IMG/VR virus record: IMGVR_UViG_3300025012_000026
Coordinates: 1 to 64,000 of that record
Length of the DNA stretch: 64,000 bases
Reading direction: 5' to 3' (one strand)
Below, one piece after another: positions 8,016 to 32,929 of this stretch. Under the pieces are notes generated by a model. It was not told the origin of the DNA and ran no database searches. It saw only the letters and a program-made list of their open reading frames with translations. The position numbers and the translations under genes were made by a program. Position 1 is the first letter of the stretch. Each line of letters opens with the position of its first letter.

Positions 8016-9257
8016 TTGCCCGATAAACCATGTCAATCACCTTACATTGATTCAAATGTATTAATGGATCACCCTAAAAAAGTTTTTGAAGATTTTTCAG
8101 ATTCGGGGATACAATTATCAGGATTTGTTCTTGGTGAATTAGATAATTTAAAGAAAAATGGTAAAACAGAAGAGGTAAAATTTCAGGCCCGTAGAGCGAC
8201 TAGATATATAAACGCTAATCGAGACAAAATTACATATATCATCGATGAAACAGATTATAATAATCTTCCTTCATGCTTTGATAAAGGGATTATGGATAAT
8301 AAAATAATCTCACTTCTGAAGGTTTTGTACGAAAAAGATAATAATACAATCGCTTATAGTAATGATATGTTATTTAGAGTTAAATGTGATTCTCTTAATA
8401 TTCCTTGTAAACAATATGGTGGTGAAACATCTAATGATATTTATAAAGGATATCAAAAATTATCAGGAGATACAAACTTCATAAATAACTTTTTTACAGA
8501 CATTGATAATGGCATCAATAAGTATCAATTTGTAGTAAATGAGTATCTAATATTTTATAATTCAGATGAAAAGAAAGAAAATGAATATAGATTTAATGGT
8601 AAAAAGTTTGTCGGATTGAAACTACCTGATTCAAAAGTTATTAAAGGTAAGAATAGTTTACAGAGATGTGCTTTAGATTTGTTGAATAACAAAGAGATAC
8701 CAATAGTTTGTGTCAACGGAAAAGTCGGGAGTGGAAAGACTTATTTGTGTGTAAGAATGGGATTGCATCAAACAGTAGATAAAGGTGATTTTAATAAACT
8801 TTTAGCAATTAGAGAAGCAATAGGCGAAGGAAAAGAAGTTGGATATCTTAAAGGCACATTTGAAGAAAAAACAGAAATGTTCTTTAAACCAATTGTTCAT
8901 TCATTAGAAGGTGGAGAAAGAGAATTACAAATCCTTTTATCCCGTGGAGTGTTGGAATCTAATATTCCATTTTACCTTAAAGGAACAACATACGATGAGA
9001 CAGTAATTGTTGTCGATGAATCTGAGGATCTTTCGCCCAAGCAATTAAAACTTGTCGGTACAAGACTAGGGGATAAATCTAAAATTTATTTAGCAGGAGA
9101 TTATAAACAATCTAGTGTAGATTCTTCAGAAAGAAATGCTTTAGTACAAATGTGTAATGAATTAAAAGGAACTAAAGAATTTGGGTGCATTTATTTAGAA
9201 GAAGATGTAAGAAGCGTTGCTTCTGGTATATTCTCAGATTTATTTGAGAAGAAATAA
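8016..9257 (+). CDS. phoH: PIN domain plus PhoH-family ATPase
   Basis: N-terminal IDSNVLMD/ELDNLK/DNKII PIN motifs; Walker A GKVGSGKT; IVVDESEDL; AGDYKQ. Confidence 0.9.
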   Translation: MPDKPCQSPYIDSNVLMDHPKKVFEDFSDSGIQLSGFVLGELDNLKKNGKTEEVKFQARRATRYINANRDKITYIIDETDYNNLPSCFDKGIMDNKIISLLKVLYEKDNNTIAYSNDMLFRVKCDSLNIPCKQYGGETSNDIYKGYQKLSGDTNFINNFFTDIDNGINKYQFVVNEYLIFYNSDEKKENEYRFNGKKFVGLKLPDSKVIKGKNSLQRCALDLLNNKEIPIVCVNGKVGSGKTYLCVRMGLHQTVDKGDFNKLLAIREAIGEGKEVGYLKGTFEEKTEMFFKPIVHSLEGGERELQILLSRGVLESNIPFYLKGTTYDETVIVVDESEDLSPKQLKLVGTRLGDKSKIYLAGDYKQSSVDSSERNALVQMCNELKGTKEFGCIYLEEDVRSVASGIFSDLFEKK

Positions 9258-29967: not shown

Positions 29968-30989
29968 ATGAGTTTTGGAATAGATTTTACAAAATTACAA
30001 GAGAATGCAGAACAAGTTGAGATTAATAAGATTGTAAAGAATAAGTTGGCGAACGCATCACGTCTAAGTGAAGACGTAGAGATTTTTACAAATATTGTTT
30101 ATGGTAAAGATGTATCTAAATATGGTAAAAAAGTTGATACAGTGATGGATAAAATTAAAACTTTAGCTGGAATGGCTAATGATGGTAATACTCAGGCTAA
30201 AGCTGAGTTGAATGCTATTCGTACTATTACTATTCAGCAACCTTTGGAAAAGAGATTAGCTATTAATAGTGCTATGGGGAATGTAACAAAGGTATTGGCA
30301 AACGAGGAACTGAGGTATTCCGTTGCCCAATTACAAGGAGAGAAATCAAGAGTTCAAGCCAATTCTGGTTCTTTTGTATTCCCAACTGTTAAGAAAAGAA
30401 CTGGAACTATGACTGTTCAAAATGCAACAGGTGGTTTGATTATCGATCCAAGAGAATTAATGTCTGGTGATACAGATACGATGGCTTATGCTAATGAACA
30501 AGTATTGACTTCTATTATTAACCAAATGGTTCTTTCTCATATCAATGCTTTAAGAAGTGCTATTACTGCTGCCACCACATTGAAAAACTACAGCGAGGGG
30601 ATTACTAAGACTAATGTCGAAAATACAAGAAAATTAGCGAGACGTTTTGGTTCTTCTGTTACAATTATGGGAGACTATAGTGCAGTTAATAAGTTAAGTG
30701 ATCTTGCTAATTTTAGTGTTGTTGCTGCTGGAACAGAATTTAGATTCCCAGACTCAGTGATGGAAGAAGTAATGAAGACTGGTCTTCTTAAAGTATATAA
30801 AGGAAGTCTCGTCATAGAAATGCCTAATAGCTATAATATGATTGATCTTAATACCGCTGGAGATTTCTATGCTCCTCAATTACCTACAACTGATTTGTGG
30901 TTCTTACCACAAGGCCAAGTTAGTCCCCTTCAGATCGGAATTCAGGGTGGTTTGACTAGTATGACAGCCACAGACATTAATTTAAGGGT
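29968..30989 (+). CDS. major capsid protein (YonB-like), exon 1
   Basis: Position; AELNAIR, ARRFGSSVTIMGDY, GGLTSMTATDINLR. Confidence 0.8.
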
Positions 30990-31363
30990 AACTTTAGCCC
31001 CGTATGTACAGAAATGCGCATAGGACACTTCCTTAATTGCAGGTAATTCCTAAAGCTCTCATGCCACAACATAAGGATGAAATATGCCTAAGTGTGACGG
31101 AACGAAAGTAGAAAAAAGTTGAGAGATGGCATAAGGTTAAATCTTAAGTGCTTTTACAATGGATGTTCATTGCAGGTAAGACTCGAATAGAGTAAACTTC
31201 AACGACTATGGCTGAAATGCCAGTACACTCAAGCGAGTGGAAAATGGAAGCCCTTAACAGATAATGCTGAAGGTGAAGAAATAGTCTATTCTCATATGAA
31301 AGTATGAGCAGTTATAAACGATATAGAAGTTGCGATTCTATATGAATATAAATTTATAAAAAG
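30990..31363 (+). ncRNA. group I intron (~374 nt, no ORF) in the major capsid gene
   Basis: P1 GGGT/GCCC with U.G; TTAATTGCAGG; P7 GACTAT 31204-31209 with ATAGTC 31281-31286; exact junction ambiguous by 1 nt. Confidence 0.85.
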
Positions 31364-31461
31364 CCGAAGTTACAAGATACGATATTTCCTACGGAAACAA
31401 GGTTCTAATTGAGCTAATTCCGGCGATGGGATATATATATGATGCTGCTCTAGCTGAGTAA
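31364..31461 (+). CDS. major capsid protein, exon 2
   Basis: (A)EVTRYDISYGNKVLIELIPAMGYIYDAALAE* continues the capsid C-terminus. Confidence 0.75.
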
Positions 31462-31596: not shown

Positions 31597-32929
31597 GTGG
31601 GCAAGAAACTAAATATTGATCAGTTTAAACAATGGATGTTAGAAAATTCTGTTGATATAAAATGTATTAGTAACTATGGTGTTGATGATAAAATTGATAG
31701 TAAAACAGAACTATTATTCCAATGCAATAGAAATCATACATTCTCAAAAACAATAACTAATTTCAAAAAGAATCCTAGGTGTCCTCATTGCACTGGAAAG
31801 TGTAAATATACATTTGAAGATGCTAAAAGGATAGTCGAAGCAGTAGAAGGTTATTTATTAATATCGACTGAATATGTCAGATGTAAAGATTATTTAATTA
31901 TTCAATGTGATAAAGGTCATCCCTTCCCAATGACATTTACAGCTTTTAATGTCGGAGGACACAGGTGTCCTATTTGTAACACAGGAGGGAAATATAAGTA
32001 TGATTTAGAAATTGCAAAAGAAATTTTTAAATTAGAAAAGTGCGAACTGTTAGTAGACGAATATATAGATTGCGATACATACATACATGCCTTATATGTG
32101 TTCATGTGGTAATCCAAGCAAAATTTCTTTAATAGAATTTATCAGAGGTCATAGATGCAAAATTTGTGGTAATAAGAAAACTGGTGACGGTTTAAGAACG
32201 CCATACATAGAAACATATAATTATTTTAAAGATAATGGTTGTGAATTATTATCCACAGAAGACGAAATACAGAATAATAAAACAAAAGTAAGATATATTT
32301 GTTCTTGTGGAAACCCAGATGAAGTATTGGTTGAAAAGTTTAAAGTTGGCGAAAGATGCAACAACTGTAAACAAGAAAGAACTGAGGCAACATTTTTAGA
32401 CAGATATGGTTTCAAGTATGCATTATCAAGTCCAGAAATAAGAGAAAAAATTAGACAAACTCTTTATAAAAATGGATCAGCACCATGTAGTAAACAACAG
32501 GAATATATACACAATCTAATTGGTGGAGAACTTAATTATCCTGTAAAAACATCTTCTTTGGACATTGCTTTCCTAGAAGAAATGATTTATTTAGAGTACG
32601 ATGGCGGTGGACATAAGAATAGTATTTTGTATGGCACTGTTACAGAAGCAGAGTTTATAAAAAGAGAAAGAAATAGAACTTATGGGCTACTACGTTCTGG
32701 TTGGAAAGAAATTAGAATCATTAGTGAAAAAGATGACCTAATCCCATCAGACCAAAAGCTTCTAGAAATCCTATCCTACGCACGTAAATATCTAAATCAA
32801 AATCATCATTACATAAAATTTGACATTGACAATTCAAAAATAATTAATTCTCAAGGTGAATTTGACTATGATTTTGGCGAACTAAGAAAAATCAAACCAA
32901 CAGATATTCAAATCCAAGAAGCAATATAA
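31597..32929 (+). pseudogene. zinc-finger/Vsr-like (EDxHD-type) homing endonuclease, frameshifted
   Basis: Two overlapping ORFs 31597-32112 and 32087-32929; removing one ATAC unit of (ATAC)3 at 32075-32086 fuses them; C-terminal LDIAF...LEYDGGGH. Confidence 0.75.

What the first reader, a model, noticed from the sequence alone, without database searches (positions are those of the whole stretch)
30982..31371. Major capsid intron whose canonical splice sites give a 1 nt frameshift
Seen: P1 places the 5' splice site after U30989 (AGG GT) and the nearest plausible terminal G is 31363 (AAAAG|CCGAAGTT). Joining these gives GTC CGA AGT, which is out of frame with the capsid C-terminus EVTRYDI. The guide AACTTT pairs with GAAGTT (31366-31371), which fixes the junction here. 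In-frame outcomes need either 5' cleavage after G30988 (giving R-A-E-V-T-R), or 3' cleavage after C31364 (giving R-V-E-V-T-R), or one C being an assembly error or mutation. Inference: either a non-canonical splice site in an essential gene or a defective, cryptic prophage.
Basis: partly seen in the sequence, partly recalled or inferred. Interest (0 to 1): 0.6.

Follow-up and report, generated by a model that had tools for sequence, protein, structure and literature searches.

The report
Capsid intron spliced after G

Summary
Joining after U30989 and after G31363 leaves one extra base and breaks the frame.

It is not an assembly error. At least eight distinct alleles from independent groundwater assemblies keep the same junction, and exon 2 stays conserved in frame.

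Intron-less homologues read DINL-R-A-E-VTR. The exons therefore fit only as AGG G|CC GAA, which makes the intron U30989..G31363 (375 nt).

This has a published precedent. In "group B" (IS607-type) IStrons, the element sits after AGGG/TGGG/GAGG. The following U pairs with G next to a loop, is the first intron base, and is absent from the ligated exons (BcISt1 RT-PCR; CboIStron in cells and in vitro). The core here is 72.6% identical to the c-st and D-1873 IStron ribozymes and has the same P1 layout.

A sister intron in a tail-tube gene (L053) follows the same rule.

Verdict: a functional IA2 intron with the known G(-1) splice-site shift, here without any IS part, in an SPbeta-like capsid gene. 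No RNA data were available to confirm it directly.

The parts
29968..30988 (+). Exon 1 of the major capsid protein gene (SPbeta-like). It ends ...TTA AGG G, so the last exon base is G30988, the first base of the Ala codon.
   Evidence: ORF. tblastn gives 39.5% identity to Bacillus phage SPR spr_70 and SPbeta-like phages over 95% of the length. It is colinear with intron-less homologues up to DINLR.
30989..31363 (+). Group I intron, subgroup IA2, 375 nt, with no ORF. Its first base is U30989 and its last is G31363.
   Evidence: RF00028, E = 1.1e-11. 72.6-79.5% identity of the core to ribozymes in phages c-st, D-1873, KKP_3916 and others. The boundaries are set by the in-frame join and by intron-less alleles.
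30986..31000 (+). P1 hairpin. Exon GGG plus intron U30989 pair with the internal guide GCCC (30997-31000). U30989-G30997 is the closing pair next to the 7-nt loop 30990-30996.
   Evidence: Fold. The layout matches that described for group B IStrons, with the U-G pair next to a loop and shifted by one bp from the splice site.
30990..30997 (+). P10 part of the guide. AACUUU pairs with GAAGUU (31366-71). G30997 can pair with C31364, the first base of exon 2, once U30989 has left with the intron.
   Evidence: Read directly from the sequence. In the sister intron L053 the 3' exon also starts with C. The partner swap is inference.
31001..31024 (+). P2 hairpin. The exon-1 reading frame runs into the intron and stops at TAG 31021-23, inside P2.
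   Evidence: Fold; ORF 29968-31023.
31028..31308 (+). Catalytic core. P3 31028-32/31246-50; P4 31038-43/31167-74; P5 31048-50/31161-63 with extension 31056-31152; P6 31175-84/31190-98; P7 31204-08/31282-86; P7.1 31209-12/31219-22; P7.2 31226-30/31235-39; P8 31252-60/31267-73; P9 31291-97/31302-08.
   Evidence: Rfam alignment. RNAalifold on 11 related ribozymes predicts 59 pairs, 35 with compensatory changes. Coordinates were mapped. P7 and P8 were assigned by hand from the Rfam alignment. L019 carries a CAG/CUG to CAC/GUG swap in P8 and a C-G to U-A swap in P3.
31312..31351 (+). Peripheral 3' hairpin (P9.1/9.2). It is followed by the single-stranded tail UUUAUAAAAAG.
   Evidence: Fold.
31363..31363 (+). 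Terminal guanosine (omega G). The 3' splice site lies between G31363 and C31364.
   Evidence: It is the only G that gives an open frame downstream of the TAA at 31357-59. It is in frame only with a 5' exon ending at G30988.
31364..31461 (+). Exon 2 of the capsid gene. CC completes the Ala codon, followed by EVTRYDISYG...ALAE and the stop.
   Evidence: Translation. The sequence is conserved in this frame in all alleles, with and without the intron.
31597..32929 (+). Free-standing homing-endonuclease-like gene downstream of the capsid gene, with repeated treble-clef zinc fingers and a nuclease-like C-terminal part. In this window a 4-nt insertion near 32061-32080 splits it into two frames (31597-32112 and 32087-32929).
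   Evidence: Pfam DUF4379. PHROG 559, 681 and 12131, annotated HNH or homing endonuclease. It is a single 442-aa ORF in L019. It is present beside capsid alleles both with and without the intron. Any role in intron mobility is inference.

Best explanation
Window 30989-31363 is a functional, ORF-less group I (IA2) self-splicing intron in the major capsid gene of a 227 kb SPbeta-like groundwater phage. Its ribozyme belongs to the lineage known from group B (IS607-type) IStrons. In that lineage the 5' exon ends in ...GGG. The next base, U, forms the U-G pair with the guide directly beside the P1 loop. The cut falls one phosphate upstream of that U, so the U leaves with the intron. Here, guanosine attack is inferred to cleave between G30988 and U30989. 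Exon ligation then takes place after the terminal G31363. The mRNA reads ...UUA AGG G|CC GAA GUU..., giving DINL-R-A-E-VTRYD, which is exactly colinear with intron-less capsid genes. After the first step the guide G30997 is free to pair with C31364. The ligated exons GGG|C-C-GAAGUU then match the guide AACUUU-A-G-CCC at 10 of 11 positions. What is shown here: the sequence features, conservation of the junction, the in-frame requirement, homology of the core, and the same rule in a sister intron. What is taken from the literature: the experimental proof of the G(-1) cut in BcISt1 and CboIStron. What is inferred: that this particular intron splices the same way, and the partner swap of G30997.
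For: (1) Twenty-two of 36 related capsid loci have no intron and read R-A-E, K-A-E or R-S-x at the site, e.g. CGA GCA GAA GTG. One codon spans the junction and its second base is C in the Ala alleles.
(2) Only the G30988/G31363 join reproduces Ala. The canonical join gives stops after 1 to 16 codons, depending on the allele.
(3) Eight distinct alleles with the intron keep the AAGGG-T... and ...AAAAG-C(C/T) junctions while their exons differ by about 16-20% at the protein level. L024 changes GCC to GCT, which is synonymous.
(4) Sister intron L053:8595-8995 lies in a tail-tube gene, as AAGG|U...UUGG|CA. Only the G(-1)/terminal-G join gives KKAK-A-KNNWS, colinear with the intron-less homologues' KKAKAKNDFT.
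(5) PMC4227781 reports that group B IStrons insert after AGGG, TGGG or GAGG. The U is the first base of the element, and the U-G pair is followed directly by a loop. BcISt1 RT-PCR and sequencing showed ligated exons lacking the U.
(6) CboIStron (target TGGG) splices without a scar in cells and in vitro.
(7) The core is 72.6% identical over about 285 nt to the c-st and D-1873 IStron ribozymes. Those elements start GAGG|U(A/U)AC..., like AGGG|UAAC... here.
(8) The ribozyme core is intact: RF00028 E = 1.1e-11, and 35 of 59 pairs covary.
(9) Two other introns in the same gene region (L025-27, L036) follow the canonical U|...G| rule and are in frame. The anomaly is therefore specific to this lineage and not a fault of the method.
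Against: There is no RNA evidence for this intron. Only three tiny SOLiD metatranscriptomes from the same site were listed, and nothing could be laid on the region. How group B ribozymes select a bond 5' of the U is not understood (PMC4227781, discussion). This element lacks two group B hallmarks, the IS607 part and the CGG 3' end. Its core is about as similar to a group A-type ribozyme with a TTGAT| target (L062, 73.8%) as to group B ones. The link to group B therefore rests on P1 and the target site, not on overall similarity. The R-V-E join cannot be excluded by sequence alone, because the variable base 31365 is a third codon position in both models.
Confidence: 0.8

Rival explanations
1. 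The 5' cut is canonical, after U30989. The 3' cut falls one base later, after C31364, so the intron would be A30990..C31364. The mRNA would read AGG GUC GAA, giving R-V-E.
For: The join is in frame and has the right length. With GAAGUU/AACUUU as P10, the first exon-2 base would lie directly opposite A30996, next to the U-G pair, which is the canonical contiguous P1-P10 geometry. Base 31365 varies C/T as a third codon position would.
Against: It requires a terminal C in place of the near-universal terminal G, although the P7 sequences match the Rfam group I consensus. Val is not seen at this position in any of the intron-less capsid loci. In L053 the same model also predicts Val where homologues have Ala. 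BcISt1 and CboIStron experiments show the U is removed and the element ends in G.
Confidence: 0.08
2. Splicing is fully canonical, giving AGGGU|CCGAAG. The extra base is skipped by the ribosome through a +1 shift of the Arg tRNA from AGG to GGG on A-GGG-U. The product would be R-S-E.
For: A-GGG is a possible +1 slip site. The +1 frame reads UCC or UCU (Ser) then GAA GUU in all alleles, and Ser occurs at this position in many homologues (RSQ, RSE and others). AGG is used only by the alleles that carry the intron.
Against: A major capsid protein would need near-complete frameshifting, and no stimulatory element is evident. The AGG codon is already explained by P1 pairing. No frameshift-suppressor tRNA is present; the genome has a single ordinary tRNA-Thr. 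Experiments on the related ribozymes make the shift unnecessary.
Confidence: 0.04
3. The extra base is an assembly error or a recent mutation. On this reading the gene is broken and the element is a decaying prophage.
For: The canonical join is out of frame. The neighbouring endonuclease-like gene is frameshifted in this genome.
Against: The same junction occurs in eight distinct alleles from many independently assembled samples, with flanking substitutions. Exon 2 is conserved in frame with synonymous changes. The same one-base offset occurs in a different gene (L053). The record is a 227 kb viral contig rated complete.
Confidence: 0.02

Closest known systems
BcISt1, the group B IStron of Bacillus cereus ATCC 10987 (Tourasse, Stabell and Kolsto 2014, PMC4227781)
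   Same: IA2 ribozyme with P7.1 and P7.2. It is inserted after AGGG. The next base is a U that forms the U-G pair directly beside a loop. The 5' exon ends in G, and RT-PCR showed the U is removed with the intron. ORF-less copies exist.
   Different: BcISt1 carries (or carried) an IS607-type transposon part in its 3' region. It ends in CGG, has a long AU-rich inverted-repeat stem, and sits at scattered GG sites. The element here is 375 nt with no IS part and ends in AAG. It occupies one fixed site in many diverged capsid alleles, as a homing intron would.
CbISt3/CbISt4 and CboIStron of Clostridium botulinum and its phages c-st and D-1873
   Same: Closest sequence relatives among the group B type: 72.6% identity over about 285 nt of the core. 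They have the same GAGG|U(A/U)AC start. Scarless self-splicing after TGGG has been shown in cells and in vitro.
   Different: They carry TnpB (and TnpA) with an omega RNA that overlaps the 3' splice site, and P1 has a much larger loop. Here there is no transposase within the intron. The genome's three TnpB genes lie elsewhere and have no ribozyme beside them.
Canonical IA2 introns of phages (T4 td, nrdB and sunY; Twort orf142; SPbeta bnrdE/F), recalled from established literature
   Same: Small self-splicing IA2 introns in essential phage genes. The exon frame runs into the intron and stops before the core. Mobility is by homing.
   Different: Those introns cut after the U of the U-G pair. Here that rule gives a frameshift. 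The two other introns found in this same capsid region (L025-27, L036) behave canonically.
Intron plus free-standing homing endonuclease ('collaborative homing', e.g. the cyanophage psbA intron with F-CphI), recalled from established literature
   Same: An ORF-less intron with an endonuclease-like gene immediately downstream of the interrupted gene.
   Different: No cleavage site or activity is known here. The gene also sits beside intron-less alleles and is frameshifted in this genome.

Membership tests
Group I intron (Rfam RF00028), subgroup IA2 | Conserved core helices P3-P9 with the J8/7 and P7 consensus | tested here: met
   RF00028 full-length match at 30968-31308, 50.2 bits (gathering score 50), E = 1.1e-11. 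It scores 42.2 bits in the genome-wide search. RNAalifold on 11 relatives predicts 59 pairs, 35 with compensatory changes.
Group I intron (Rfam RF00028), subgroup IA2 | P7.1 and P7.2 hairpins between P7 and P3' | tested here: met
   31209-12/31219-22 and 31226-30/31235-39, both with covariation.
Group I intron (Rfam RF00028), subgroup IA2 | 5' exon ends with the U of the U-G pair | tested here: not met
   A U-G pair exists (U30989-G30997). With U as the last exon base, no terminal G gives an open frame. Comparison with intron-less alleles places the U inside the intron.
Group I intron (Rfam RF00028), subgroup IA2 | Intron ends with a guanosine (omega G) | tested here: met
   G31363, in frame with exon 1 ending at G30988.
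Group I intron (Rfam RF00028), subgroup IA2 | Self-splicing activity | not testable with these tools
   No RNA reads were available.
Group B IStron (Tourasse et al. 2014) | Inserted after a GG-ending site (AGGG, TGGG or GAGG) | tested here: met
   A30985-G30988 is AGGG. The sister intron L053 follows AAGG.
Group B IStron (Tourasse et al. 2014) | The first base of the element is the U of the U-G pair, and that pair is followed directly by a loop | tested here: met
   U30989-G30997 closes the 7-nt loop.
Group B IStron (Tourasse et al. 2014) | 3' end terminates in CGG | tested here: not met
   It ends ...AAAAG. L053 ends ...UUGG.
Group B IStron (Tourasse et al. 2014) | IS607-type component (serine recombinase ORF A and/or TnpB ORF B), or its long AU-rich inverted-repeat remnant, in the 3' region | tested here: not met
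   No ORF fits in the 375 nt. The genome has no PF00239 match. Three TnpB genes lie at 73.8, 113.7 and 118.5 kb with RAGATH-18 RNAs but no ribozyme. The 3' region has only short hairpins.
Mobile intron served by a free-standing homing endonuclease | An endonuclease gene next to the interrupted gene that cleaves the intron-less allele | tested here: inconclusive
   The gene at 31597-32929 matches PHROGs annotated as HNH or homing endonuclease. It is also found beside intron-less alleles and is frameshifted here. Its cleavage specificity cannot be tested with these tools.

The most novel reading that the evidence does not exclude
The one-base upstream 5' cut is an intrinsic property of a ribozyme lineage and does not depend on the IS607 transposon. 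On this reading, stand-alone, homing-type phage introns (this capsid intron and its tail-tube sister) use it. The guide G first pairs with the intron's own U(+1) and then swaps to the first base (C) of the 3' exon for ligation. Such IS-less introns could be the stock from which group B IStron ribozymes were recruited, or streamlined descendants that switched from transposition to homing.
Probability: 0.3. Interest if true: 0.55.

Novelty: new variant of a known kind. Interest (0 to 1): 0.4.

Why it matters
For annotation: applying the textbook U|...G| rule to this intron lineage produces a false frameshift. That can lead to a false 'pseudogene' or 'defective prophage' call in essential phage genes. 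The correct rule for this lineage is 'GG | U...G |'.

For RNA biology: how group B IStron ribozymes pick a bond 5' of the U-G pair is still unexplained. The introns described here are small (375-401 nt) natural examples with no transposon part. They have several alleles, a sister copy in a second gene, and canonical introns a few bases away in the same gene. That makes them convenient substrates for testing splice-site selection.

For evolution: they link IStron ribozymes to ordinary homing introns of phages.

Tried and rejected
- **Rfam on the whole window** at gathering threshold found nothing. The match only just passes on a short stretch, so Rfam alone would have missed the intron.
- **Other U or G positions as splice sites.** Every G near the 3' end (31363, 31366, 31369) has the same codon phase, so none is in frame with U30989. 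U30982 or U30994 as the 5' site have no guide pairing and would change the protein length (read).
- **UCCUUAA (31030-36) as an alternative guide for UUAAGGG.** Rejected, because CUUCC is the 5' strand of P3, which has a compensatory change in L019.
- **A frameshift-suppressor tRNA.** None found; the genome has a single ordinary tRNA-Thr.
- **RNA evidence.** Only three small SOLiD groundwater metatranscriptomes were listed, and nothing lay on the region. This is no evidence against expression.
- **DNA reads.** Independent assemblies were used instead.
- **TnpB loci of the same genome.** They have no ribozyme, so they are not IStrons.
- **L070 from the metagenome scan.** This is a different intron that shares only the P7/P7.1 motif. 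It was not followed up.
- **c-st.** It does not discriminate between the G(-1) join and the U(-1)/one-later join, because its 3' exon starts with U.
- **Spliced mRNA model.** It was never sent to a search or folding tool. The exons were searched separately by reference. Only about 140 nt around each junction were joined, inside a script, to read the junction codons.

Full report
**What is there.** The window is the first 64 kb of a 227,247-bp viral record (IMG/VR, rated complete by CheckV) from a groundwater metagenome.

The ORF at 29968-31023 is the 5' part of a major capsid gene. Its first 340 residues match the capsid protein of SPbeta-like Bacillus phages (SPR spr_70, 39.5% identity over 95% of the length). 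The last 32 residues of those proteins align with a short frame at 31366-31461.

Between the two lies a group I intron. RF00028 matches 30968-31308 over its full length (50.2 bits, E = 1.1e-11) when the local stretch is searched. The score falls just under the gathering threshold in whole-window and whole-genome scans.

An alignment with ten related ribozymes supports the core. RNAalifold predicts P3, P4, P5 with its extension, P6, P7.1, P7.2 and P9, with 35 of 59 pairs showing compensatory changes. P7.1 and P7.2 place the intron in subgroup IA2.

**Check of the observation.**
- GGGU (30986-89) pairs with GCCC (30997-31000) around a 7-nt loop, and this is the minimum-free-energy fold.
- AACUUU (30990-95) is complementary to GAAGUU (31366-71).
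- G31363 is the only usable terminal G, because a TAA at 31357-59 closes the exon-2 frame upstream.
- Joining after U30989 and after G31363 leaves one base too many. The product reads ...LRVRSYKIRYF... and stops early.
- All nearby G's (31363, 31366, 31369) have the same codon phase. No terminal G can be in frame with a 5' exon that ends at U30989.

**Not an error and not a dead gene.** A protein-guided scan of viral contigs returned 36 related capsid loci. A DNA-pattern scan of metagenome contigs returned more.

The same intron sits at the same site in at least eight distinct alleles: the window with L008; L005-7 with L009; L019-21; L023; L024; L067; L071; L072. Their exons differ by up to about 20% at the protein level.

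All of them keep AAGGG-T-AAC at the 5' junction and AAAAG-C(C/T)-GAAGTT at the 3' junction.

Exon 2 stays open and conserved in the GAA frame in every allele. The frame produced by the canonical join stops after 16, 6, 6 or 1 codons, depending on the allele. A systematic assembly error or a decaying gene cannot produce this pattern.

**Where the exons must join.** Twenty-two related loci have no intron here. They read DINL-R-A-E-VTR (for example CGA GCA GAA GTG), with Ala or Ser at the middle position and never Val.

SPR and a gut phage align without a gap if exactly one codon spans the junction.

The exons with the intron fit as AGG G + CC GAA (GCC; GCT in L024, which is synonymous). The inserted DNA is therefore U30989..G31363, 375 nt. 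The 5' exon ends in G, and the U of the U-G pair is the first intron base.

**Internal controls.** Two other, unrelated group I introns interrupt the same 40-nt stretch of the gene in other phages. One is in L036, after GAAGU|. The other is in L025-27, after GGU|.

Both obey the textbook rule, with U before the intron, G at its end and a contiguous P1-P10 guide. Both are in frame. The offset is therefore specific to this intron and not to the way the junctions were read.

**An independent test in another gene.** The core motif also finds a sister intron in L053 (a 167 kb viral contig). It lies in a major tail (tube) gene that holds five group I introns.

The junctions there are AAGG|U...UUGG|CAAAG (intron 8595-8995, 401 nt). 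Intron-less homologues (L058-60, 61-62% identical) read KKAK-A-KNDFT.

Only the join 'after the G before the U / after the terminal G' gives KKAK-A-KNNWS with no gap. The canonical join is out of frame, and the 'one later' join gives Val.

**The precedent.** Tourasse, Stabell and Kolsto (NAR 2014, PMC4227781) divided IStrons into two groups.
- Group B includes BcISt1 of Bacillus cereus and elements of C. botulinum and its phages c-st and D-1873. These are inserted after AGGG, TGGG or GAGG.
- The U that follows was shown to belong to the element, by comparison with empty sites. For BcISt1 it was also shown by RT-PCR and sequencing: the ligated exons lack the U, and the full-length circle contains it.
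- The authors note that in group B the U-G pair is followed directly by a loop and is shifted by one base pair from the splice site.
- Zedaveinyte et al. (bioRxiv 10.1101/2023.11.20.567912) showed that the C. botulinum IS607-type IStron (target TGGG) self-splices without a scar, in cells and in vitro.
- A 2026 mutational study found 98% of wild-type splicing reads at the exact element boundary. Every alternative 3' site it saw also ended in a terminal G.

The intron here has all the 5' features: AGGG|U, and a U-G pair that closes a 7-nt loop. Its core is 72.6% identical over about 285 nt to the c-st and D-1873 IStron ribozymes. Those elements start GAGG|U(A/U)AC..., just as this one starts AGGG|UAAC....

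**What it is not.** It is not an IStron.
- It has no ORF and does not end in CGG.
- The genome has no serine recombinase.
- The genome's three TnpB genes lie elsewhere, with RAGATH-18 RNAs but no ribozyme.
- Its core is about as similar to a group A-type ribozyme (TTGAT| target, L062) as to group B ones. The link to group B rests on P1 and the target site, not on overall similarity.
- Its fixed position in many diverged alleles, with identical flanking exon bases, is what homing with co-conversion would leave.

An endonuclease-like gene lies directly downstream (31597-32929). However, it also sits beside intron-less alleles. In this genome a 4-nt insertion splits it into two frames. Its role is open.

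**Mechanism proposed.**
- Step 1: guanosine attacks the bond between G30988 and U30989. This is inferred by analogy with BcISt1 and CboIStron.
- Step 2: the 3' OH of G30988 attacks the bond after G31363.
- Once the U has left with the intron, the guide G30997 can pair with C31364. The ligated exons then match the guide at 10 of 11 positions (read). The sister intron also has a C as the first base of its 3' exon.
- This partner swap is my inference and is untested. IStron 3' flanks are reported to be variable, so it cannot be a general requirement.

**Rivals.**
- A 3' cut after C31364 (R-V-E) needs a terminal C, although the P7 sequences match the Rfam group I consensus. It also predicts a residue never seen at this position.
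- A +1 ribosomal slip on A-GGG-U (R-S-E) is possible on paper. It would have to be nearly complete for a capsid protein, and no suppressor tRNA exists.
- The assembly-error and pseudogene reading is contradicted by the alleles.

**Limits.** No RNA reads cover the region, so the junction is inferred and not observed. The spliced mRNA model was not sent to any search or folding tool. The exons were searched separately by reference, and only short stretches around the junction were joined in a script to read the codons.

**Verdict.** What is new is the setting: a stand-alone, homing-type intron in phage capsid and tail genes. Interest is moderate.

Noticed in passing
window 30960-31400, compared with L036:4020-4375 and L025:3790-4050: Three unrelated group I introns occupy three different sites within about 40 nt of the 3' end of this capsid gene in related phages: this one, one after GAAGU| in L036, and one after GGU| in L025-27. 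An endonuclease-like gene lies just downstream in most of these loci (absent from seven of the 36). This may be an intron insertion hot spot.
   Followed up: partly
L053:7100-9380: A major tail (tube) gene of about 250 codons is interrupted by five group I introns (five RF00028 matches). One is the sister of the capsid intron. From memory, Twort orf142 has three, so this would be an unusually high count for one phage gene.
   Followed up: partly
window 31597-32929: The free-standing homing-endonuclease-like gene is split into two frames by a 4-nt insertion near 32061-32080, relative to the single 442-aa ORF in L019 and L017. All five contigs that carry this allele share the split.
   Followed up: partly
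window 30982-30988 and 31030-31036: The end of exon 1, UUAAGGG, is also perfectly complementary to UCCUUAA (the 3' half of the P3 5' strand plus J3/4). This alternative pairing could compete with P1 and P3 during folding, or it could be chance.
   Followed up: no
window 31326-31331: A second copy of GAAGUU, the P10 partner, lies inside the P9.1/9.2 hairpin. It appears to be sequestered in the stem.
   Followed up: no
G000:C1 73773-73973, 113678-113881 and 118472-118675 (outside the window): There are three TnpB-like genes (PF07282). Two have RAGATH-18 RNAs beside them. None has a group I ribozyme, and the genome has no serine recombinase.
   Followed up: partly
G000:C1 148837-148911 (outside the window): The only tRNA gene in the 227 kb genome is a tRNA-Thr with anticodon AGU.
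   Followed up: no
L042:1426-1440 (Alicyclobacillus phage KKP_3916): A related ribozyme has C where the others have the U of the U-G pair (GGAG-C...GCUCC), which would give a C-G pair at that position. Its splice sites were not worked out.
   Followed up: no
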